A DNA stretch of 64,000 bases from Selaginella moellendorffii (lineage: Eukaryota > Plantae > Lycopodiophyta). The stretch is taken from NCBI RefSeq assembly GCF_000143415.4, contig NW_003314359.1, positions 525,250 to 589,249 of the forward strand, in the 5' to 3' direction. This document shows, in pieces, positions 31,279-47,776 of this stretch. The first letter of the stretch is position 1. Each line of letters begins with the position of its first letter. A program made the position numbers and the translations under genes. The notes below the pieces were generated by a model. The model was not told the origin of the DNA and ran no database searches. It saw nothing but the letters and a program-made list of their open reading frames with translations.

Positions 31279-34200
31279 ATGGGAGTGCCCGCATTCTATC
31301 GCTGGCTCACGCGGCGCTATCCCTTGATCATTGCCGATGCTGTGGAGGATGATTTGGCGGCCCTTTCTGGCGGATTGGAGTATGACAATTTCTATCTTGA
31401 CATGAATGGGATCGTGCATTTGTGTTTTCATCCAGAAGGCAAGGTAAGGAATTGAATCGATTGTAGCTAGTGGATTATTTCAACTCTTTCTTGCGAGCGC
31501 AGCCAGCTCCTTTGTCGTATGATGAAGTGTTCCATTGCATTTTCCAGTGCATCGATCGTCTTGTCGCAATCGTGCGGCCCAGGAAACTTTTGTACATGGC
31601 AATTGGTATCGGTTTCTTTCCTTTTTGTATTTTCCTTTTCTGGTTTGTTCATTGATGGAAAAATAAAACTTTTAGATGGTGTTGCTCCGCGGGCTAAGAT
31701 GAATCAACAACGATCGAGGCGGTTTAGAGCTGCAAAAGAAGCTCTTGAGGTAAGAAGTTTTTTGTGTTTCCTGTTTCATTTGTTGGAGCTCAGCTGTTAC
31801 CATTTCCAGGTCCAGAAGAGAGGAGAAACGTCAGATTCGAATGTTATCACACCTGGGACGGAATTCATGGCCTTACTTTCCGATGCATTGAGTCAATATG
31901 TGCAACTGCGTTTAAGCGAAAGTCCTGGTTGGCAAAGGATGAAAGTAAGTTATTTTTCTTCTTTTCCCTTTTGTAGTTTTTAATATTTTGAGTGAAACTT
32001 TGTCTTTCTACAGGTTATATTATCCGATGCTAATGTTCCGGGTGAAGGCGAACATAAAATATTTTATTTCATTCGCATGCAAAGAAATCTTCCTGGCTTT
32101 GACCCAAACACTCGGCACTGCCTCTATGGCCTGGTATCGTCTTTGCGAGAATGGATTTTATGCCGTGCTTCTTTTAGAGTTTCTAAGTATCTGTCGCTGG
32201 GGCCTTTTAGGACGCTGACTTGGTTATGCTAGCACTTGCTACACATGAAGTGCACTTCTCTATTTTACGCGAGGTACACTTTAGCTAAACGTCTAATCTC
32301 TTCTGATACTCGATTTTAAGGTGCCATGTCCTAGAAAGTGCTACCTCTGTGGCGAAGTTGGACATATTGCTAAACATTGTGATGGAACACAGAAAAGTAC
32401 ACTTGAAGAGACGGAAGATGTTTCGTATCAAGTAAGCACTGTACTTTGCGGCGTTGTGTTCATTTGTTCTGCACAGTTCCTTCACATTTGGCTCCTTCGA
32501 GAGTATTTGGAACTTGAACTCAAGATAGCAGATGCAGATTTTGAGCGCATAGTGGACGATTTTGTTTTTATTTGTTTTTTTGTTGGCAACGATTTTCTTC
32601 CGGGTTTACCAACACTAGACATTCGACAAGTAAGTGGTTTTCTCGTCTGAAATTAGGAATTTTTCTTACTTGCTACTTTACAAATCTGTCAGGGAGCAAT
32701 CGGCATGCTTTTAAGTGTTTACAAGCAAGAATTCAGTAATATGAGCGGGTATTTGACGGAAACTGGCGAGGTGAGTGGCCTGTTCGTTCTCTATTTAAGT
32801 TGTATTGAAAGCGATGAAAATTTCAGGTGAACTTGAGAAGCCTTGAGTACTTTCTTGAGATGGTCGGCCAGATTGAGGACGGTATAATCCAAAAGCAGTT
32901 TCAGAAAGTAATGCTTTTTTTTTTTCAATTATAATCTCGTGGTTGTCCAACATTTTTCCCGCTTGACGAGAAGAAGAATGCTTCAAGCGTCACTTGTCCT
33001 GCGGACTCAGCTGTAAGTGTATGCATCCAAAGGTTTTATTCATTAAAAACTAAACTCGTCATTTGCAGAGCTGGAAGGCAACGTACTACGAAGAGAAGTT
33101 TGGCTCTGAGTACTCTGAGGAGCTTAAAAAGGGCCTGGTAGTAAGACAGTTTTAGCAGTATCTTAGAGAACTCTCATTTTGCGCTTTCCGTGTTCAGGCG
33201 CAAAAGTACACCGAGGGATTATGCTGGATATTGCATTATTATTACAGAGGAGTGAGCTCGTGGCAATGGTGATTTTTAATCCTGTGTTGGAAGTGTAGCA
33301 AAAGTCGAATCGTTCTCATGCTTGTACGTAATTCCTTTGCCATTTTCTAACATGCAAGTAAAATGATGGTGACGACGTGCAGGTACTACCCCTACCATTA
33401 TGCTCCTTTTGCATCGGATTTAGCAGGACTTGGTGCTATAGAAGTCCGTTTTGAGGCTGGCAAGCCATTGAAACCTTTTGATATGCTTATGGGCGTTTTA
33501 CCCGCATCAAGGTAACATCTTACTTCTAGCATACTGCTTTATGCTTCGTTGTTTCCTCGGATACAGTGCATGGGCTTTACCGGAGTATTACCGGTTGTTG
33601 ATGACAAATCCAGCGTCACCTTTGATAGATTTTTATCCTGAAGGTAAAGCAGACTATGAACTTAACGATTTCACCTGATCTGCAAGTACTACGTGCAGAA
33701 TTTGTTGTTGATATGAACGGAAAACAATACCCATGGCAGGTATTATAACGATCTCATTACAGTTTTGCATCTGGTTGAGCTCTTACTTTTGCAGGGTGTT
33801 GTAAAACTACCATTCATCAACGTAGAGCGTCTTCTTGTAGAAACGAGAAAGCTAGAAGGGACGCTTTCGGTGAGTTCTCTAGACTTCGATATGTAGCGTT
33901 TGTTCTCATCTTCGCTGTCACAGGCGTCAGAGATCAAACGAAACAGCATAGACCAGGAGTTATTGTTTCTCTGCTGTCACCAACCTCTTGCGAGATACAT
34001 ATACGCTTGTGTCGAGGACACGGAGGGAATCTGCGCAATAAATCCAATAATCAGGTACCTATGAAGAGAATTGACGTGCTCATTTTAAAATCGTGGTCGT
34101 GGATGATTCCAGCGAAGGCTTAAATGGATTCCTCACTTTGAATCGAGGGGCTCTGGAAGCTGCTGTACCACATAACGTTCTGTAAGTGAAAGTGCAAGCT

Positions 34201-34674
34201 TTTACTGCCAGGGAGCTAAACGAAATTCCATATAATTCTCAACAGCTGCGTAAACTACATATGCCCCTCAAATCATCCTCATATTCCAAGCCTTCCCGAC
34301 GGGGTTATACTCCCTGCAAAGGTAACCTATGACGTGATCACATCCAGAACCAAAGCAAACCTTTCTACTCGCCTTTACAGAGCATTGTTGATCGAGACTT
34401 TCGAAGGCATTCTCATCGCGGGCGACAAAGAAGGTTCGGGAAGGATTTAAGAAAACACAAATCCTGACAGATTGTTTGCAGCACCTCGAGCGGAAGCTCC
34501 GATCCATACCGCGAACACGGTAGTCCCTCTGGTTAGTGATTTCTCGCTTTTACTTCGTTTCTTCCTCTCTGGATCTTTGTTCCATCTCAGTTTCTCTCCT
34601 GTGTCTCAGGAAGGTGGAGAGGGAGACGAAGTAGTCACAGCAGAACTAGGAGCGTCGATAGTCACGAGAGTTAG
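31279..34674 (+). CDS. XRN-family 5'-3' exoribonuclease (plant XRN2/3/4 type), compact
   Basis: [66 protein letters not shown] knuckle [33 protein letters not shown]; about 23 small exons. The last exons are less certain. Confidence 0.9.
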
Positions 34675-34743
34675 TAGACGACACTGGGCCAACGGTTGGG
34701 ATTGCTTTAATGTTATGGATAGTTATCGGAATCCAACGGTTTA
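34516..34743 (+). repeat. ~230-bp direct repeat, copy 1 (XRN 3' end + PWP2 promoter)
   Basis: Closely matches 38281-38501. Confidence 0.93.
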
Positions 34744-38280: not shown

Positions 38281-38501
38281 CACGATAGTCCCTCTTGTTA
38301 GTGATTTCTCTGTTTTACTTCGTTTCTCCCTCTCTGGATCTTTGTTCCATCTCAGTTTCTCTCCTGTGTCTCAGGAAGGTGGAGCGAGAGACGAAGCAGT
38401 CACCGCAGAACTAGGAGCGTCGAGTTAGTACACTGGGTGTCAAATTCCAACGGTTGGGATTGCTTTAATCTTATGGATGGTTATCGCAATCCAACGGTTT
38501 A
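38281..38501 (+). repeat. ~230-bp direct repeat, copy 2 (upstream of PRP39)
   Basis: Closely matches 34516-34743; followed by AAACCCTAG at 38519-38527. Confidence 0.93.
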
Positions 38502-38702: not shown

Positions 38703-41700
38703 ATGGATGGTCAGGAGTACGCTGGGACTCGAATGCAGGATTATGGCGCCGCGGCCGCTGACAAGGCCGTGGAGTATGATCACCGGAGCGTGGCTGTGGA
38801 TCAAAACGGCGAGGAAGTCCTAGGTATGTGTTCCAGGTCTTTTTAGAGCTTTTAGCCTGAGAGGATTGGTTTTTCCAGCTCCAAGCAACGAGGAAGAGAG
38901 GCTGTGGGGCATCGTGAATGCCAATCCAGCGGACTTTAATTCATGGACGCAGCTGATTCAAGAGACTGAGAAGCTCGTGCGTTTTTTTTTTTTTTTTTTC
39001 TTTTTTGGAGTTCTTGAGTCTCTCAAAACGTGCTAAAGCTTTCGTTTCTTCTTTTCTCTTCCAGGATGATATAGTCAAGTTTCGCCAGTGCTATGATACG
39101 TTCCTGGCCGAGTTTCCTCTGTGCTATGGCTACTGGAAAAAATACGCGGACCATGAGAACCGGCTGGCAACGCCCGAGAAGACCATCGAGGTTTACGAGA
39201 GGGCTGTGAAAGCCGTGACGCACTCAGTCGACATATGGGTGCACTACTGCTCCTTTGTTTCGGCGGCCAAGCCCGAAGATCCAGAAGCGCTGAGGAGGTA
39301 AACTTTAGCACGCCGGTGGCATTTTTCTTTATCCTGACTGGGCAGTGTTTTGCTTTGTCAATCCCTGAGCTGTCTAGCTTCTTTGTTTCCTTCTAACCGT
39401 TGGCTGGTATTTCTGCAGCTTTCATCCTACTTTAAATGTTTTTCTCCAGAGGGAAGGTTGGCGAAACGGTTTGAGCATGGTTTTCCTTTTTTAGTTCGTC
39501 CTCGCATTCAGTCTTTTCGTTTTTCTCATGTTCTTAGTGGGCTGGTTGCTTTTCTCTTTGCTTCTTGGCAACATACCTTCAAACTGGTGCCGTCGGCAAT
39601 CGCGGTGAACACCACTGGTGTTGTAGGAAGGTAACTTTAGCTGTTTAAGAGCAAGGTCCCTGCCTTCTGCTGGAAGATATGCCTTCTTTGATGGGGTCAG
39701 GCTCATGCTACGTTTACGTTTTTTTTTCTTCCTTTATCAACTTCGATGGGATAACAACTATCTTTTTCATTTTTATTTTTTTTTCAGGTTGTTTGAGCGT
39801 GGACTCTCGCACGTCGGCACCGACTACCTGGCGCATCAGCTTTGGGACAAGTACATTGATTTTGAGTATTCTCATTCGAACTGGGTAGGCATCACTCAGT
39901 TGTATACACGGATTTTACAGATAGCCCTTCAAGCTTTGGATCGCTACTTCTCACAGTAAGAAAATTCTTAAAACAGTTTGCATGCTAATGCTTTCTTTCA
40001 GCTTCAAGGAGTTAGCCAACAATCGACCCATAGCGGAACTGAAAGGTCCTGAAGATAGCGCAGAAGCCGATAATACTGTTCCCGAGCAAATAGATAAAGC
40101 AGGAGCTGATGAAACTGCAGAAGCCCCAAAGGATCCAGAAGTTGAAAGGTTTATTAGAAGAAGAGAGGAGCTATATAAATCGACGAAGGAGTGGGATGCA
40201 AAAGTTCGAGAGTATGAAACCGCTATAAGAAGGCCGTATTTTCATGTCAAGCCTCTAGATGACTTGCAACTACTCAACTGGCATCGCTACCTGGATTTTC
40301 TGGAAAAAGAAGGTGACTTTGACAAGGTAATGCTGTCTTTTCCCTACTTGACGCTGAAACTAATGTATTTTAATTGCAGATAGTGAAGGCATACGAGAGA
40401 TGTGTGATCGCCTGTGCAAATTATCCGGAGTATTGGATTCGCTATATTCATACAATGGAAGCAAAATCTCGATCTGAGATAGCTGATGATGCTTTGGATC
40501 GCGCACTACACATTTTTGTCAAGGTTTATCGAAGAGTTCTACGTTCTTTTCTGACATCTTCTGTATTGCAGAGACGACCCGAGATACATATCTACGCTGC
40601 TAGATTTAAAGAACGCAGGGAAGATGCTGCAGGCGCTCGAAAAGAGTATAGCGTTCTCAGCTCTGAAATAGCTCCCGGGCTTCTTGAGGTTATTTCTAAG
40701 CACGCAAATTTTGAGAAAAGACAGGTACATGGATTTGTCCCATTTTTCATACGATGCTAAGCGTATTTTTGTAATCTAGGGGAATATTGACGGCGCTTGT
40801 GCCATCTATGAATCTGCTTTGGAAGTGGAAAAAGCGAAGGAGGAATCGAGAGTTTTGTCTTTCTTGTATATTCAATATATCCGGTTCCTTTCTGAGGTGA
40901 GAACTTCTGATGCTTTCCTTTCTGACAGTGTGTGTTCTAGGCCGGACTCTCAGGTAAATCGAAGGAGATCTTGGCCCTTGCATTGGAGAAACTACCGAAC
41001 TCCAAAGTTATCTTGGAGGTAAGTTTCTTTCTCCTTTTCTTTTTCTTCTCATTTGCTATACTCGCTGAAATCTCTTTACAGGCTGCGATCCATTTTGAGA
41101 CTCTCTCTCCCGAGAAGGACATACCAAAACTCGAGGCTATCATTGAACGTGCTATACTCAGCAGCGGCTCGGACGCTGCTTTGCAATCATCTGATCGTGA
41201 GGAGATATCGAGTTTATTTCTTGAGGTTGTGACTTCTTACTCCTTTATCGTAAGCACTCACATTTGTAGTATGGTTTTTGCGGCAGTTTCTGGATTCTTA
41301 TGGGACTGTAGAAGACTGTAAGAGGGCTGAGCTGCGGCATCGACAGGCATTCTTGTACTCGAGGTCCAGCGATTCCAAGAAGCGCTCGTCACTGGACAGC
41401 GCCGTCTCTGATCGGAGCAAGCTCGTCAAGACCGGTTCCAACGCCGTCGCTGGTTATACCAATGGACAAGCGCAGTGGAGCTACCAAAACTGGCAGCAAC
41501 CTCAACAACAATGGAACCAAGCATACCCGGTAAGAACGTTTTGGTTTCAATGTCACGCATCTTACAAATCATAGAAACTCTTCGCAGGCTACGGACTATA
41601 ACTATAGCAGCTATCCCCAGCAGCCGCAAACGGCACAAAGCTACGCTGGGTACCCTCAAGCTTATCAGCAACAAGTACTGTGAAAGCTCCTCTCAAGTTT

Positions 41701-41772
41701 ATTGCTGAAAATTCTCTCATTTTTTTTTTCTTGGCTGTTTAGGATGGAAATTGGACTGCTTCAGCGTGGTAA
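38703..41772 (+). CDS. PRP39: Pre-mRNA processing factor 39 (HAT-repeat U1 snRNP protein)
   Basis: [66 protein letters not shown]; Q/Y-rich C-terminal tail. Confidence 0.94.
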
Positions 41773-42052
41773 TAGAGAACTACTTAGGAGTGGGAAGACG
41801 ATCTTATTGTTCTCTCTTTTGGAGGACCCTTGAAAGCACGTAAAATGTAACGAAAACGTTTTGAGGTTAGCTTCATATATATTAAGTGCTTACTATCGTT
41901 TGAATCGAGAATATCCAGTAGCAATAATTTTGTTTAGGGTTTAAACGATTCTTTAGGGGATTTTAGAGGGAGCGAGGGAGAGTTCCTAGAATCTAAGACG
42001 ATCGAGCAGCATCGGGGCATTCTTGCAATACGCGCGCGATCGCTCTGGAAGA

Positions 42053-43711
42053 ATGCAGGCAAGGTATGATTCTGGATTCTTCTCTTGCTTGAGATCGATC
42101 GATCGATCGATCTCGCTGCTTCCTCTCGAACAGCTACGGCGCGGACAAGCTCATCGTGTGGCCGCCGTGCGTGCTGCTGGAACATACGGGGCTGGGGCAT
42201 GATCCGGAGACTGGGAAGAGCATCGGCCTCAATGCCGCGGAGGTGAGGAGTGCTGTGAGCGCAGTGGCGCCCAAGATCGCGATCCGCAGGGTTGTTCCCG
42301 TGTACAAGGAGGAAGGGCACAAGGGCCGCTACCTCGTCGTCTTCCCGGATTGCGACGCTGGGTACATCGACGCGGTGGCTCTCCATGATGCGTTCAAGGA
42401 TCGCAAGAGGGGGCGTGACGAGTGGGGGCGTGACGAGCGGCAGGAGGTCCGCTATGGCGAGAAGAAGAAGGAGCTCTATGGATACTTGGTGGAGCCGCAC
42501 GAGATGAAGAAGCTAGACAGGAAGAAAAGACTGGTGAGGAACTGGAAGGAGGAGAGTTTCCAAGAGAAAGTGATGAAGTCGCAGCGAGAGAAGATGAAGG
42601 TGAGGAAGGCCGCTTCTTTTCTTCTCTTCAAGTATGAGCTTGATCAAAGGATTTCTTTTGCAGGCTAGCGAGGAGAACCAGAAGATTGAAGCCGAGCTGC
42701 TAGCATCGGTGAACGAGCAAAAGAGAAAACTGGCGGCCGATGAGGCCGCCATGGACAAGCGCAAGGCAGAGATTATGGCCGTGGACGAGGAGTATGCTGC
42801 CGAGGAGCGCCGGCAGGAGGAGAATAGGAAAAAGCACGAAGAACAAGTAGGCAGTGCTTTGTCCATTCCATTTCTTTCGTTTCTTCTCGTATTCTGATGC
42901 GGTCGTATGTTTCTCTGTGACAGAAAAAGCGGATGATAGACCAGTTTGAAGCGGAGAAGGCCGAGCGATTGAGGCAATTCACCGAGAAAGAGATGAATAT
43001 GCGCGCCGAAATCAACAAGAACCTCAAAGACGAAGAAGATGAGATGGCTCGCATTCGTCGAGACAACTCGTCTCTGGAGAGTAATATTAGAGTGCAGCAA
43101 GCTTTGGCCATGGCGTAAGAAGCATTCTCTGGTCTATTCCATCTTTCTCGCTCACTGTCAATGTTTCGTATCCTTGCAGGGACATGCGCGCTAGAACTCA
43201 AGTGGCTATCGCTACCGAAGCGCAGAAGGGCCTTGACGAAATCAAGACAAGGCATGAGTTCAAGTTGCGGGAGATGAAAGAGCGGCATTTGGAGGAGAGG
43301 AAGAAGGTAAGCAAGTTTGTATTTCTCCTTTTTTCCTAAAGCAGGTTTTTCTTTGTGCGTTGCAAAGCTCCTGGAGGAGCGCGCTGCAAAGAAGGAGGCA
43401 GCGTGGAACAGCTACAACGTCGGCCAGGAAGCTCTGGACAAGGAGATGGAGACCGTCCTTGGGCTTGTAAGTCTCTTCATCTTGTGATCCAAGCAGAGCT
43501 TTGTTCTAATGCTTCTTTATCCAAACTTTTTTTCCAGGAGTGCCAGGTTTGTTTCGAAGAGTTTGGCCCCGAAAGGCCCAAGGTGTTTTACATCGCCTGC
43601 AAGCATGCCAAGTCATGCCAGCCGTGTGCGGACGAGCTGTGGAAGAAGAACCACGAGTGTCCCCACTGCCGGACCGTCCAGAACAAGAAGCCTATCAAGC
43701 TCTTTGACTGA
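42053..43711 (+). CDS. SGS3-like XS domain + coiled coil + C-terminal C3HC4 RING protein
   Basis: Seven exons (42053-42063, 42134-42599, 42664-42846, 42924-43114, 43180-43306, 43368-43466, 43538-43711). XS motifs IVWPPCVLL, GHKGRYLVVF..GY..A..LH..F, LYGYL; RING CQVC..CKHAKSCQPC..CPHC. Confidence 0.85.
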
Positions 43712-44122
43712 TATTTATCTACCATACGTACATTATACTCCGGTAAGTTGGAGCTTTTCTGAATCAAGGCTCTTTTCAGGATCAACAAGAACTTGGAACT
43801 ATGCATAGTGGCTTTAACTTTTGGAGCAAAGTATTTGGGGGATCTTCCACGGTTTTATAAGCTAGAGAATAGTAGTGTTGGGAGTGTACAAAATTTGTCG
43901 GGGGACCGACCAGACTATATATCATATACCTCTGCTAAACTTCTCTAAGTTCCGAAAGTTGTCTCGCTAGAATTTTCCTGTTCTTGCTTGACTTGTGTAA
44001 GTTCCGATAGTTGTCTCGCTAGACTTTTCCTGCTTAAATGAAAGAGAGGCTTAGCTCAATAGTGAAGAAGATGCTCCGCTCTGGAAAAGAGGCTTATACC
44101 CGACCTTGACGTTGTACGTTGC

Positions 44123-45909
44123 TCACTCGTAGGTGACCTCGGGCTTGAGCTCGATCACCATACGACAGACGGGACACTTTGCGGGGCACTTTGGCTTGCG
44201 GAGGTTCCAGATTCCCGAGCAGCATTCGATGCACATCGTGTAGTGGCCGCATGGGACGAGAACTGCCCTCCTTAGCTCCGATGAAAACTGCCTCGTGCAA
44301 ACAATGCATTCCTGCGAAGGAACCACACGGAAAATGAGAGAGAAAAAAGACATCAAATGTTGGCAAGCGACTCACTTTTGGAGAGTTTTGTTGCTCTTGC
44401 TTGGCCCGCTTTTGTTTCTCCAGCAGCTCGTCCAGTGCCATTTTCGTCTCTTTCTCCACCGCCTCTTGGAGCTGAAAAAGAAAAGCAATCAAATCTCGGC
44501 AAGCTACGAAGTCAATTCACCTGCTTGAGCTCACTTTCGTGTTGTGTGATAAGCATTAACTCCTCACCCCGAAAGTCCGATTCAATTTTCTCCAGACACT
44601 TGCGCTGCTCTTCCTCATCCCTTTGTTGCTTGCCTTTCAGCTGCTCCATTTTCTCCGAGCTGCGGCAGATGGTGATCGCGAATCGAGAGAAAGAGAGAGA
44701 AAACAAAACTCACGTTTGTTTGGCTTGCTTCCGCAGCAATCGCTCCAGATGTTGTTTCTGCTTGAGAGCTTCGTTTCTTTGCCTAACCATCTTGGCTCTC
44801 CTCAAAACCATTTGATGCGCGGTTTGCTTTTCCTTGTGGTTCAGCTGCTCCTCAAAGAGCTGCATTTTTCGCTGGATGTCGAGCTACAAGACAACAACAA
44901 AGTAAGAAAACCAAAGAGAGAGTCTCTGTCACCTTAAGAGCCTCCGAATTATCAGCGGGCTGGTGTCTCTGTCGTAGCTCCGTCAGCTTGTCCTCCCGGA
45001 GCTTCAGCATGCTCGCTAGATTCGAATTCAGCAAAGTTGTCTTCCCCTGGGCGACCTCGAGCTTCCAGCTTTGAAGCTTTTGAGCCTTCACGTTGTCAGC
45101 AAGTTTTTCCTCATCCTGACACAGAAAACAAAAGGAGCTATAAAAGCAGAAACAAGAAGAAAGTGAAGCTCGCACCATGTTGAGATCCTTCATGTAGCTA
45201 GCAGCTTCATCCAAACTCATAGCGCACCAGTCTACCAGTTTTCTCTCCGGATCAATCCGCGCCATGTCTTCCGGCTGGAGCACCTTACACGGCTCCATCA
45301 AGCAGCGCAGCAGCGTCAAAGCGAGGGGGATCTTCTTGCAGACAACGAGAAATCCTTCGCAGACCCTCTCAACTAAAGCAAGAACACCAGTTACGAATCA
45401 AAAGAGAAAAGAAAACACTGGCACTTACTTTGATCGATCACACTCTCCTCGATCAAGCTCCGAGCCTGCTCCACGCTGGAGCAATCCACAAGCACCACCG
45501 GCGGCCAGACCACTTTCTTGTGATCCTCGAGCAAGACCCTGGAGCTCACCCGGGCCTCGGCGAGCTCCACTTTCTTCCCGCGATCTTGCGGCTTGGGATC
45601 GATCACCTCCACAAGGGCCTTGTGGTAGCCGCGATGCTGAGCCACGTACTTCTTCTTGAAGGCCTTGGCGTGAGCCATAAGACCCACCCAACCAGTGACC
45701 CTGGCGCGGCACACGCAGCAAATCTTGATCTCCATGTCCTTGAGGCTGGGCTTGGCATCTCCTACTTGATCCCTGGCCTCTGGAAGGAGCTTCTCATACG
45801 CGGCCCTTCCAGCCATCTCCTCGTCATCACTGTCCAGATCGTCGTCCTCCTCGGAAGCGCCTTCGTCTCCGGAGAGATCGTCCCTCTTCCGCTTGCTATC
45901 GTCCTCCAT
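44123..45909 (-). CDS. zf-XS-like + shortened XS + coiled coil + C3HC4 RING protein (paralogue of the neighbour)
   Basis: Acidic N-terminus; CCVC..GLMAHAK..QHRGYHKAL (zf-XS-like); VVWPPVVLV; coiled-coil exons; RING CIVC..PCGHYTMCIEC..CPVC; 5'-UTR intron with donor GTATGT near 45997. Confidence 0.82.
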
Positions 45910-46062
45910 CTGCTGGCAAAGAATGCGAGCAAGCGATCAATAGGATGCGATCGATCGAGGCGAGGATCGGCGCCAGGGCGCGGAAGAACATACATACCTT
46001 TGGGCGCGCTTCCTCTTCCAGCTCAAAATCCAAGACTTTAGGTTTTTAGGGGGGTTTTGAAA

Positions 46063-47776
46063 ATGAGAGGTGCGGTGGTTCTTTGCTGCTCCCAGGCGAT
46101 GGCGCCAGGCGCTAGGGCGAGAATGCCGGTCCACGGCGCCAGGCGCTGGAGCTCCGCGGCCTCGGCCGTCGCTGCCAGTGTGGATCTCCGGGGCTGGGTG
46201 AAGAATCAGGGGGGATTTGTGTGGAGCGGCCTCCATGTCGTTCACAGTGGATCTTCTCACGGTATGGGGCTTGTGGCGACTCAGGATTTGCCTCAGGGTT
46301 CCACGATAATCACTCTGCCGCGAAGAATTCCAATGCCGATGCCTGATCCCGAGAATGCTGCGGTTTTAGCGCCATCGGAGGGAGTGATTTGCGAGATTGC
46401 TAATCGAGTTCCAGGTAGTCGACTTGAAAGTTCTTTTTTTCCTTTCCTGTTTCGCTGGTACTGACCTCGTCTTGCCAGGAACTGATAGAGGAGCTTTGGG
46501 CAATGAGGCTGGGCCTCAAGCTTTTGTATGAAAGAGCTCAGAAAGGATCTTACTGGTGGCCATATATCAGCATGCTTCCACACTCTTTCACCCTTCCGAT
46601 TTTTTTCTCTGGAGTAGACATTGAGAGCATCGACTACGCACCTGTTACACATCAAGTGAGTCAACTTTGCTATCTGGATTTAAATCTCAATCGCATTTTT
46701 GCTTTTCTCTTTCAGGTGAAAAAGAGGTGCCGATTTCTCTTGCAGTTCTCCTCCGAGTTGGCCAAGCTAGAATCACTGCCGGAAGAAATTCATCCTTTTG
46801 CCGGTCAGTTTGTTGATTCGGGAGCGCTCGGCTGGGCAATGGCTGCTGTCTCGAGCCGGGCTTTCCGGATTCACGGTGTCACCAACAAGCTTTGCTCGGC
46901 AATGATGCTTCCTCTGATTGATATGTGCAATCATAGCTTCCAGCCGAATGCTCACATCGAGGAGGACCTGTCGAGGGATGCTCAGGATGTCAGCTTCTTG
47001 AAGGTTCGTTGTTCGTTGTTCTCTACCTTTCAAACACATCAATCACTTGACTCGTGTTTTTCTTTCAGGTGGTGACTAAACGTAACTTGGAGAAGGGATC
47101 AGCGATCACTCTAAACTATGGCCCGCTCAGCAATGATCTGCTTTTGCTAGACTACGGTTTTGTCATCCCTGACAATCCACACGATCGCATCGAGCTGAGG
47201 TACGATGGGAGCTTGATGGAGAACGCCAGGATGATAGCGGGCTTGAGTCGTACGGGCTCGCCACCATTTTCATCTCCGGCTTCTTGGCAAGTGGACCGGC
47301 TCAAACAACTTGGTCTCGCTGATAGTGGAGAATCACAAAAGGTTCACAGTTACTCTCTGCGAGAAAAAGAAGTAGCGAGAACTCATTGTTTTGATGTGTA
47401 GGTGACGCTTGGAGGTCCGGAGGAGGTTGATGGGCGGTTGCTAGCAGCGTTGAGAATCCTCCACGCTGAGAGCCAGGAGCCACTCGAGCGCAGAGAGCTC
47501 GTCTCGTTACAAGCTTGGGGGGTGGAGAGCATGGTGAGCAGTGACAACGAGGAGCGAGTGCTGCGAACGCTCTGTGGCCTGGGAGCAATCGTTTTCAACC
47601 AGTTCAAGACGACCATCGAGGAGGACGAGGCGAAGCTCTCGGACAAATCCCTGGCGGAGACGAGCAGGATCGCGGTACAGTTCAGGCTGACGAAGAAGAG
47701 ACTGGTGGTGCGCGTCCTGGAATCGCTTAAGAAGAGATTGATGGATCTCAGAGCCGTCCGAGCAGAGTTCCAATAG
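46063..47776 (+). CDS. SET-domain methyltransferase, Rubisco LSMT/SETD3-like, probable organellar transit peptide
   Basis: GMGLVATQD, ELWAMRLGLKLL, WWPYISMLP, SSRAF, LPLIDMCNHSF, NYGPLSNDLLLLDYGF; LSMT substrate-binding tail TTIEED. Confidence 0.92.

What the first reader, a model, noticed from the sequence alone, without database searches (positions are those of the whole stretch)
42053..45909. Convergent pair of SGS3-like XS - coiled coil - RING genes: candidate RNA-binding E3 ligases
Seen: two tail-to-tail, multi-exon, open genes each carry the XS hallmark (I/V)VWPP, a long coiled coil and a C-terminal C3HC4 RING with Cx2C..CxHx3Cx2C..Cx2C spacing. Gene A has a full XS but no zf-XS; gene B has a zf-XS-like finger but a shortened XS. 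Established: SGS3 and IDN2/FDM XS proteins bind dsRNA with 5' overhangs in RDR6 and RdDM silencing and, as I recall them, end in a coiled coil or XH domain rather than a RING. Inference: a lineage-specific family coupling dsRNA recognition to ubiquitination, possibly as a complementary heterodimer through the coiled coils.
Basis: partly seen in the sequence, partly recalled or inferred. Interest (0 to 1): 0.85.

Follow-up and report, generated by a model that had tools for sequence, protein, structure and literature searches.

The report
Paired XS–coiled-coil–RING genes in Selaginella
Two expressed neighbouring Selaginella genes join an SGS3/IDN2-type RNA-binding XS domain to a long coiled coil and a ubiquitin-ligase RING finger; they belong to an old, uncharacterised family of non-flowering green plants that probably tags proteins sitting on particular RNAs.

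Summary
RNA contigs and reads confirm 12 of the 13 coding introns as joints, the last by exon boundaries. They also place the XS and RING exons on one transcript.

- **Gene A** (416 aa, 42053-43711, +) has a Pfam-significant XS domain, about 210 helical residues and a C-terminal C3HC4 RING.
- **Gene B** (484 aa, 45909-44123, -) has a finger homologous to the SGS3 zf-XS (hhalign 96%), a cut-down XS, a coiled coil and a RING.
- **Paralogy:** the two share intron phases and one exon length, so they are old paralogues.

The organism is Selaginella moellendorffii. RefSeq calls these genes "SGS3 homolog" or "vicilin-like" (A) and "BRE1B" or "RING finger protein B" (B).

The family is not lineage-specific. 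XS–coiled-coil–RING proteins occur in Chara, Diphasiastrum and Ceratopteris, and in a probably gymnosperm transcript. None was seen in flowering plants. One 2018 paper mentions the Selaginella XS+RING protein in a single sentence, and I found no functional study.

Most likely these are dimeric RNA-binding RING E3 ligases. RNA binding, ligase activity and the A/B heterodimer idea are all untested. This scan had already noted the same pair on another piece of the genome (the other haplotype), and a possible third copy.

The parts
42053..43711 (+). Gene A, 416 aa, 7 coding exons: 42053-42063, 42134-42599, 42664-42846, 42924-43114, 43180-43306, 43368-43466, 43538-43711 (stop included). Identical to RefSeq XP_024519004.1 (P0141).
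   Evidence: Gene model. Five introns seen as GT..AG joints in RNA contigs or reads; the last (43467-43537) is implied by the X5 contig's exon boundaries. Identity to P0141; RefSeq names.
42144..42506 (+). XS domain of gene A (residues about 8-128), inside exon 2
   Evidence: Pfam PF03468 61-62 bits against cutoff 25. AF2 model's best Foldseek match is 4E8U, the IDN2 XS domain: E 4.8e-7, TM 0.63 by target.
42558..43457 (+). Helical, coiled-coil region of gene A (residues 146-356, hinge at 278-289), spread over exons 2-6
   Evidence: AF2 helices 146-278 and 290-356. 46% charged residues, no proline.
43541..43669 (+). C3HC4 RING of gene A (C361-C403), followed by a conserved C-terminal tail up to the stop at 43709-43711
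   Evidence: Pfam zf-C3HC4_3 34.9 bits against cutoff 27. Eight ligands invariant across the family. Structural matches to RNF8, IDOL, cIAP and RNF4 RINGs.
44123..45909 (-). Gene B, 484 aa, 7 coding exons: 45909-45429, 45372-45176, 45115-44933, 44883-44714, 44659-44521, 44471-44376, 44311-44123 (stop included). Allele of SELMODRAFT_406008 / XP_002964226 (P0093, 11 residue differences).
   Evidence: Gene model. All six coding introns seen as CT..AC joints. P0093 recovered; residue differences.
45625..45720 (-). zf-XS-like C2H2 finger of gene B (C64, C67, H80, H92 and following helix, residues 64-95)
   Evidence: hhalign of B-type finger against SGS3 zf-XS: probability 96%, E 3.4e-9. The four ligands are invariant in alignment A3. 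pLDDT above 90. Pfam zf-XS itself gave no hit.
45218..45519 (-). Reduced XS-like domain of gene B (residues about 131-212), split by the intron at 45373-45428
   Evidence: VVWPP at the start and a P-x-D-M...D-P-x-R-K-x-V-x-W motif at the end align to XS family profiles; the middle is missing. AF2 gives a beta-alpha-beta-beta-alpha-beta fold. Best VIA match is 4E8U_C at Z 5.9, not clearly above ordinary RRMs. B-type orthologues score 43 bits on Pfam XS.
44379..45178 (-). Putative coiled-coil region of gene B (residues about 226-421), exons 2-6; inferred, not folded here
   Evidence: Collinear alignment with A's helical region and with the rest of the family. Composition. Exon structure matches gene A. 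Only residues 1-240 of B were modelled.
44165..44308 (-). C3HC4 RING of gene B (C424-C471)
   Evidence: Pfam zf-C3HC4_3 31.9 bits on the exon. No difference between the two haplotypes in this exon.
45998..46029 (-). 5' UTR exon of gene B, joined to the ATG exon by the intron at 45910-45997. It holds no ATG, so 45909 is the first start codon.
   Evidence: Joint 45909/45998 in the X1 contig, which ends in sequencing adapter at 46029. Sequence read.
44029..44103 (-). Optional 3' UTR intron of gene B. It is spliced in run X1 and retained in run X5.
   Evidence: Joint 44028/44104 in X1 only.

Best explanation
Genes A and B are ancient paralogues of one streptophyte family of XS–coiled-coil–RING proteins.

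**Shown here**
- Each is a spliced, expressed gene. Gene A is clearly under purifying selection between haplotypes; for gene B the signal is weaker and the counts are small.
- Each starts with an XS-type, RRM-like domain. It is full in A; in B it is reduced and preceded by a zf-XS-type finger.
- A has about 210 residues of predicted continuous helix in the middle. B aligns collinearly with that region.
- Each ends in a C-terminal RING with all zinc ligands and the usual E2-contact positions: a hydrophobic residue after Cys1, an aromatic residue in the helix, Pro after Cys7 and Arg after Cys8.
- A conserved tail, P-x-K-[ILV]-[YF]-x, follows the RING in most family members. Gene B has a variant of it (P-E-V-T-Y-E).

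**Inferred**
- The helices form a dimeric coiled coil, as in IDN2.
- The dimer pairs two RINGs into an active RING dimer of the RNF4, cIAP, IDOL or RNF8 kind.
- The XS heads bind RNA. By analogy with SGS3 and IDN2, this would be duplex RNA with a 5' overhang.
- The ligase is thereby brought to proteins sitting on that RNA and ubiquitinates them.

Substrates and pathway are unknown. These are not SGS3 or IDN2 orthologues.
For: - **Transcripts:** gene models and RNA joints, with XS and RING on one contig for each gene.
- **Domains:** Pfam XS and RING in A. RING in B. zf-XS homology of the B finger.
- **Structure of A:** the model matches the IDN2 XS plus adjacent coiled coil (4E8U, E 4.8e-7). 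Its RING matches dimeric RINGs: RNF8, IDOL, cIAP1/2 and RNF4.
- **Family conservation:** invariant VWPP, all RING ligands and Pro after Cys7 across ten representatives. Named members span Chara to ferns; two unnamed members, P0023 and P0027, look like a seed plant's.
- **Shared gene structure:** the last five introns of both genes have phases 0,0,2,0,0. Exon lengths are 183/183, 191/170, 127/139 and 99/96.
- **Selection between haplotypes:** dN/dS is 0.10 for A and 0.31 for B, and introns diverge 4-7% against about 1% in exons.
- **Tree:** XS domains of land-plant RING proteins lie outside the clade that holds the SGS3-type and other finger-bearing XS proteins (96/96 support).
Against: - No experiment shows RNA binding or ligase activity for any member.
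- B's XS has lost about half its length and may not bind RNA. The Ceratopteris orthologue is also degenerate.
- B's full-length RING score (25.9 bits) is just under Pfam's cutoff.
- Chara's RING is too divergent for Pfam, and its XS falls elsewhere in the tree on a long branch.
- Dimerisation is inferred only from monomer models and from analogy.
- Expression is low compared with the neighbouring genes.
- The branch that groups the RING proteins together is weak (68/76).
Confidence: 0.6

Rival explanations
1. A and B form an obligate heterodimer. The coiled coils pair A with B, so that A supplies the working XS RNA-binding head, B supplies the zf-XS finger, and the two RINGs form a heterodimer.
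For: - The domain losses are complementary: A has no finger and B has a reduced XS.
- Both types are kept in Selaginella and Diphasiastrum. A-type P0023 and B-type P0027 occur in the same run, SRR10915551.
- There is a precedent in the family: IDN2 forms complexes with its paralogues (Zhang et al. 2012, cited in PMC6624907).
- Within the resolution of the data, both are expressed at similarly low levels from adjacent genes.
Against:
- B-types of Diphasiastrum, P0031 and P0027 keep a full XS (43, 43 and 23 bits), so complementarity is not a family rule.
- The two genes are on different chromosomes in Diphasiastrum, so adjacency is not conserved.
- Only a B-type was found for Ceratopteris and only an A-type for Chara, although the searches were not exhaustive.
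Confidence: 0.2
2. These are coiled-coil RING ligases in which the XS-like head is a protein-binding or structural module. They would then have no RNA role; the XS fold is merely inherited.
For: - B's XS is heavily reduced and evolves fast, with a long branch and odd composition. B's dN/dS of 0.31 is higher than A's.
- RRM-like folds often bind proteins. This rests on general knowledge and was not tested here.
- RefSeq's automatic name 'BRE1B' reflects similarity to coiled-coil RING ligases.
Against: - A's XS keeps the family's conserved positions and scores 61 bits on Pfam XS.
- A's model superposes on the IDN2 XS plus coiled-coil segment.
- No Pfam family other than XS and RING types passed its cutoff in either protein, so there is no BRE1 domain.
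Confidence: 0.15
3. These are annotation artefacts or decaying genes: the XS and RING exons belong to different transcripts, or the genes are pseudogenes.
For: Low read depth. Inconsistent RefSeq models for B on the other haplotype: 299, 484 and 511 aa.
Against: - Single RNA contigs span the XS exon to the RING exon in both genes.
- Both haplotypes have open frames, and dN/dS is below 1.
- Orthologues with the same architecture exist in distant plants.
Confidence: 0.02

Closest known systems
SGS3 (SUPPRESSOR OF GENE SILENCING 3)
   Same: XS domain followed directly by a coiled coil. Gene B also has a homologous zf-XS-type C2H2 finger about 40 residues before the VWPP motif. RefSeq calls this allele of gene A an 'SGS3 homolog'.
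   Different: SGS3 has no RING. Gene A has no zf-XS. In the tree, the XS domains of A, B and their land-plant relatives lie outside the SGS3 clade. PMC5907777 treats the Selaginella XS+RING protein as not being a functional SGS3.
IDN2 / FDM (XH/XS) proteins of RNA-directed DNA methylation
   Same: XS plus an adjacent dimerising coiled coil. The solved IDN2 fragment 4E8U is the best structural match of gene A's model (E 4.8e-7) and nominally the top match of gene B's reduced domain (Z 5.9).
   Different: IDN2 and FDM proteins end in an XH domain. Here the C-terminus is a RING, and no XH hit appeared in any family member.
Dimeric RING E3 ligases at the end of a helix or coiled coil, or with an active C-terminal tail (RNF8, Rad18, IDOL, cIAP1/2, RNF4)
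   Same: C-terminal zf-C3HC4_3-type RING preceded by a long helix. Conserved E2-contact positions and an aromatic residue near the extreme C-terminus. These are the best RING structural matches.
   Different: None of them carries an XS domain. Sequence identity is only 22-30% over about 60-130 aligned columns. Dimerisation and activity here are inferred.
Animal RNA-binding RING ligases (for example MEX3 with KH domains plus C-terminal RING, or TRIM25/TRIM71); named from general knowledge
   Same: Same logic: an RNA-binding module and a RING in one, often dimeric, polypeptide.
   Different: Unrelated RNA-binding domains and a different domain order. This is analogy only, and no homology was tested or claimed.
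BRE1 and vicilin (RefSeq automatic names for B and for the other allele of A)
   Same: Charged, helical, low-complexity middle region. For BRE1, also a C-terminal RING.
   Different: Neither a BRE1 domain nor a cupin domain was detected by Pfam. These names are artefacts of compositional similarity.

Membership tests
XS domain family (Pfam PF03468) | Significant match to the XS profile (gene A) | tested here: met
   61.2 bits on exon 2 and 61.9 on P0001, against a cutoff of 25. The fold matches 4E8U.
XS domain family (Pfam PF03468) | Significant match to the XS profile (gene B) | tested here: inconclusive
   No Pfam hit. Only the VWPP start and the P-x-D-M...D-P end align, with hhalign probability 54-78%. 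The RRM-like model has 4E8U as top VIA match at Z 5.9, but ordinary RRMs follow at Z 5.0-5.7. B-type orthologues P0031 and P0029 do pass Pfam XS at 43 bits.
zf-XS finger (Pfam PF03470) | C-x2-C...H...H finger just upstream of the XS domain, homologous to that of SGS3 | tested here: met
   Gene B: Pfam itself is silent. The profile-profile match to the SGS3 zf-XS region has probability 96%, E 3.4e-9, and the four ligands are invariant. Gene A has no finger, because its XS begins at residue 8.
SGS3 orthologues | zf-XS + XS + coiled coil with no other catalytic domain, and placement inside the SGS3 clade | tested here: not met
   A lacks zf-XS and both genes carry a RING. The SGS3-type clade (99/95) and the larger clade containing it (96/96) exclude P0001, P0093 and the other land-plant RING proteins.
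IDN2/FDM (XH/XS) proteins | C-terminal XH domain (PF03469) | tested here: not met
   No XH hit in P0001, P0093 or any related RING protein.
RING-type E3 ligases (C3HC4, zf-C3HC4_3) | Eight zinc ligands with canonical spacing and a profile match | tested here: met
   A: 34.9 and 31.7 bits. B: 31.9 bits on the exon and 25.9 on the full protein, against a cutoff of 27. The ligands are invariant in the family alignment.
RING-type E3 ligases (C3HC4, zf-C3HC4_3) | Ubiquitin-ligase activity with an E2 | not testable with these tools
   Only the conserved E2-contact positions can be read from the sequence.
BRE1 family (RefSeq name of gene B) | BRE1 family domain in the coiled-coil region | tested here: not met
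   Pfam scan at E up to 10 lists no BRE1 family.

The most novel reading that the evidence does not exclude
XS–coiled-coil–RING proteins are RNA-structure-guided ubiquitin ligases of an RNA-silencing or RNA-surveillance pathway. The pathway would have arisen in an ancestor shared by stoneworts and land plants and been lost in flowering plants. In Selaginella, which is reported to lack SGS3 and the tasiRNA machinery (PMC5907777), the A/B pair would work as a heterodimer. It would recognise duplex RNA with a 5' overhang and ubiquitinate the proteins bound to it.
Probability: 0.12. Interest if true: 0.8.

Novelty: new variant of a known kind. Interest (0 to 1): 0.5.

Why it matters
XS proteins (SGS3, IDN2/FDM) are known as RNA-binding scaffolds of plant silencing pathways. 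None has been shown to carry an enzymatic output.

This family joins the same RNA-binding head and coiled coil to a ubiquitin-ligase RING. It is conserved from Chara to ferns, and probably to gymnosperms. That points to a direct link between RNA recognition and protein ubiquitination in early-diverging plants. It may also help explain what XS proteins do in Selaginella, a lineage reported to lack SGS3.

The hypothesis is cheap to test with EMSA, auto-ubiquitination assays and a knock-out in the transformable fern Ceratopteris.

The work also corrects misleading database names: "vicilin-like", "BRE1B" and "SGS3 homolog". It shows too that the B-type proteins, annotated only as RING proteins, carry a zf-XS finger and an XS remnant.

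Tried and rejected
- **Pfam on gene B.** Exon pieces and the full protein gave no XS or zf-XS hit. This was resolved only by profile-profile comparison with orthologues.
- **Foldseek on B's N-terminal model against the PDB.** Nothing below E 0.09, only generic ferredoxin-like and RRM folds. The VIA wide search put 4E8U first but not clearly above other RRMs.
- **Word-indexed homologue search with P0001 alone.** It found only two SGS3-like proteins. Gene B's database entry was reached only through an alignment that included its exon translations.
- **PDB sequence search with P0001.** No hit.
- **ESM Atlas.** No cluster of 50 or more members combines XS and RING.
- **Literature.** Searches for an XS-RING ligase found one passing sentence (PMC5907777) and no functional work.
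- **Naming the unnamed organisms.** The organisms behind transcripts P0006, P0023, P0027 and P0031 could not be named from run accessions.
- **Pseudogene or mis-join explanation.** Rejected on the RNA evidence.
- **dN/dS scripts.** Two alignment scripts failed on intron indels. Ungapped exon matching worked.
- **Heterodimer.** It could not be tested, because structure prediction here takes single chains only.
- None occurred.
Full report
**Gene models and transcription**

The stretch 42053-45909 holds two convergent genes with short GT..AG introns of 49-77 nt.

- Gene A is on the plus strand, with coding exons 42053-42063, 42134-42599, 42664-42846, 42924-43114, 43180-43306, 43368-43466 and 43538-43711. 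It encodes 416 residues.
- Gene B is on the minus strand, with coding exons 45909-45429, 45372-45176, 45115-44933, 44883-44714, 44659-44521, 44471-44376 and 44311-44123. It encodes 484 residues.

I laid two assembled transcriptome runs and two raw stranded RNA-seq runs on 41600-46400. Five of A's six coding introns and all six of B's came back as joints. A's last intron (43467-43537) was not in the listed joints, but the X5 contig's pieces fix both of its exon boundaries. That X5 contig carries A from the XS exon to the RING exon, and one X1 contig carries B from its first exon to beyond its stop.

Three extra details came from the same call:
- B has a 5' UTR exon at about 46029-45998 without an ATG, so 45909 is the first start codon.
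- B has an optional 3' UTR intron at 44029-44103.
- B's X1 contig runs down to 43596, inside A's last coding exon.

Expression of both genes is low compared with their neighbours.

**Organism and database status**

The exhaustive profile search with A's XS exon returned a 416-residue protein at 99% identity. Its cluster members are both from Selaginella moellendorffii:
- XP_024525141, "vicilin-like seed storage protein At2g18540".
- XP_024519004, "protein SUPPRESSOR OF GENE SILENCING 3 homolog". This one is identical to my translation of gene A.

Gene B is an allele of SELMODRAFT_406008 / XP_002964226, "E3 ubiquitin-protein ligase BRE1B". The other haplotype carries inconsistent models of 511 and 299 residues.

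The window is 97.5% identical over 17.7 kb to scaffold GL377569.1, so it is the second haplotype or another assembly. The pair has the same neighbours there: XRN, WD40, PRP39-like, A, B, SET/Rubisco-substrate-binding, LRR and PPR.

**Domains of gene A**

- Pfam gives XS at 61 bits (cutoff 25) and zf-C3HC4_3 at 34.9 bits on the exon and 31.7 on the full protein (cutoff 27).
- An AlphaFold2 model built on a ten-sequence family alignment has mean pLDDT 80. It shows an RRM-like XS at residues 10-145, helices at 146-278 and 290-356 with a low-confidence hinge between them, and a RING at about 360-410.
- Foldseek's best match is 4E8U, the Arabidopsis IDN2 XS domain with its adjacent coiled-coil segment (E 4.8e-7, TM 0.63 by target).
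- The next matches are RINGs that work as dimers at the end of a helix or with a C-terminal tail: RNF8, IDOL, cIAP1/2, RNF4 and Rad18.

**Domains of gene B**

- Pfam sees only the RING: 31.9 bits on the exon and 25.9 on the full protein. The precomputed annotation of the reference gene agrees.
- Orthologues bridge the gap. B-type proteins from Diphasiastrum (P0029), Ceratopteris (P0094) and unnamed transcriptomes (P0031, P0027) share an N-terminal module: a helix with K-A-Y..L-L-P, then a finger, about 40 residues of linker, and then IVWPP.
- A profile of this finger matches a profile of the SGS3 zf-XS region with hhalign probability 96%, E 3.4e-9.
- In a 39-sequence alignment with SGS3-type proteins, C64, C67, H80, H92, W135, P136 and P137 of gene B are invariant.
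- P0029 and P0031 pass Pfam XS at 43 bits. P0027 scores 23.5 bits, just under the cutoff of 25.
- In Selaginella B only the first strand (VVWPP) and the closing P-x-D-M...D-P-x-R-K-x-V-x-W motif still align. The segment holding the family's G-R-G-R-E and L-Y-G-Y-L-A motifs is gone. The Ceratopteris protein is partly degenerate too.
- The model of B residues 1-240 still predicts a compact beta-alpha-beta-beta-alpha-beta unit at 133-191 with pLDDT 80-94.
- Foldseek found nothing convincing for it. The wide VIA search ranked 4E8U first (Z 5.9, 94 residues), but ordinary RRMs follow at Z 5.0-5.7.

XS membership of B rests on orthology rather than on its own sequence.

**A and B are paralogues**

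- Their proteins align collinearly from the end of XS to the C-terminus at 20% identity.
- The last five introns of both genes have phases 0,0,2,0,0.
- The exons between those introns are 183/183, 191/170, 127/139 and 99/96 nt.
- The last intron sits immediately before the first RING cysteine codon pair in both genes.

**The family**

- Of 84 representative clusters (50% identity) that match A's XS at E of 0.001 or better, all carry Pfam XS, 26 carry zf-XS and 7 carry a Pfam RING. A ligand-pattern scan finds eight RING-bearing clusters.
- Gene B (P0093) and Ceratopteris P0094 came from later searches. That makes ten RING-bearing family representatives in all.
- A-type (no finger): Selaginella, Diphasiastrum complanatum (P0002), Chara braunii (P0067), P0006 and P0023.
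- B-type (with finger): Selaginella, Diphasiastrum (P0029 and P0125), Ceratopteris richardii (P0094), P0031 and P0027.
- P0023 is 58% identical overall to a truncated Ginkgo XS model, and much higher across the XS domain, so it is probably from a gymnosperm. It occurs in the same sequencing run as B-type P0027.
- Coleochaete has the finger, XS and coiled coil without a RING.
- No RING-bearing representative carried an angiosperm name. This is absence of evidence only.
- In a maximum-likelihood tree of XS domains, the land-plant RING proteins lie outside a well-supported clade (96/96) holding the SGS3-type and other finger-bearing XS proteins. The B-type forms a 100/99 clade whose internal order follows plant phylogeny.
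- The branch uniting all the RING proteins is weak (68/76). Chara and Selaginella B sit on long branches.
- The family alignment shows invariant VWPP, all RING ligands and Pro after Cys7. It also shows a hydrophobic residue after Cys1, a mostly aromatic residue in the RING helix, mostly Arg or Lys after Cys8, and a terminal P-x-K-[ILV]-[YF]-x tail.

**Selection**

Between the two haplotypes, gene A has 10 synonymous and 4 non-synonymous differences (dN/dS 0.10). Gene B has 9 and 11 (dN/dS 0.31), with none in its RING exon. Introns differ by 4-7%. The counts are small, so this is a weak test. Gene A looks clearly constrained; for gene B the signal is weaker.

**Literature**

- Xie et al. 2012 (PMC3378875) describe SGS3-like proteins as combinations of XS, zf-XS, coiled coil and XH.
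- Morozov et al. 2018 (PMC5907777) note in one sentence that the S. moellendorffii XS protein (XP_002979112) lacks zf-XS and instead has a C-terminal RING. They use this as an argument that the species lacks a functional SGS3. I could not tell whether that accession is gene A or a paralogue.
- I found no functional study of any XS-RING protein.

**Interpretation**

Shown: the architecture, its transcription, its conservation and its paralogy.

Inferred from established knowledge:
- SGS3 and IDN2 XS domains bind duplex RNA with 5' overhangs.
- IDN2 dimerises through the coiled coil next to its XS domain.
- C-terminal RINGs of the RNF4, cIAP, IDOL and MDM2 kind act as dimers, in which a C-terminal aromatic residue helps hold the donor ubiquitin.

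On that basis the coiled coil would make a dimer with XS heads at one end and a RING pair at the other. Such a dimer could ubiquitinate proteins on the bound RNA. I put this at about 0.6.

The rivals are:
- An obligate A/B heterodimer, about 0.2. It is compatible with the main model.
- A ligase whose XS is no longer an RNA binder, about 0.15.
- An artefact or pseudogene reading, which one search excludes.

**Verdict**

This is a new, uncharacterised variant of the XS (SGS3-like) family. It is already present in databases under misleading names and has been mentioned once in passing. It is not specific to Selaginella.

The scan had already noted the same pair on another piece of this genome (s1-411655, presumably the other haplotype). 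It had also noted a further XS–coiled-coil–RING gene (s1-431269, s1-374962), which I did not check.

Noticed in passing
window 43596-44123: The X1 transcript contig of gene B continues through the 411-bp spacer to 43596, which is 116 nt into gene A's last coding exon. The two convergent mRNAs may therefore overlap at their 3' ends and form a natural antisense pair. The few stranded raw reads neither confirm nor exclude this, and the contig could be an assembly merge of the two transcripts.
   Followed up: partly
window 46029-46074: Gene B's 5' end (about 46029) and the start of the neighbouring plus-strand SET/Rubisco-substrate-binding gene (contigs begin at 46060-46074) are only about 30-45 bp apart. 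This looks like a bidirectional promoter.
   Followed up: no
window 34526-34741 and 38281-38501: Two copies of a repeat of about 220-240 bp, 86-87% alike, lie on either side of the WD40 gene (seen as secondary BLAST matches of L001 to the window). It may be a small dispersed element.
   Followed up: no
window about 34024-34670 (L001:1-642): An XRN-type 5'-3' exoribonuclease gene (XRN_N, XRN_M) lies about 8 kb upstream of the XS-RING pair. XRN enzymes affect RNA silencing in other plants, but linkage in a eukaryote is weak evidence, and I did not test it.
   Followed up: no
window 41675-41742: The last intron of the upstream PRP39-like gene is confirmed by many reads (word depth about 400 in X1). 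A G/T polymorphism at 41809 is seen in about half of the RNA reads.
   Followed up: no
window 44123-44125 and the other-haplotype model P0137: The older 511-residue model of gene B on the other haplotype (EFJ09464) reads past the stop through a different 3' splice. The RNA here shows a 3' UTR intron that begins after the stop. The current RefSeq model on that haplotype (299 residues) lacks the N-terminal finger and XS remnant. The RNA-supported product is 484 residues.
   Followed up: partly
P0009 (Coleochaete scutata transcript): A charophyte protein with the B-type finger, a full XS and a coiled coil but no RING. It is either an ancestral state or an incomplete transcript.
   Followed up: no
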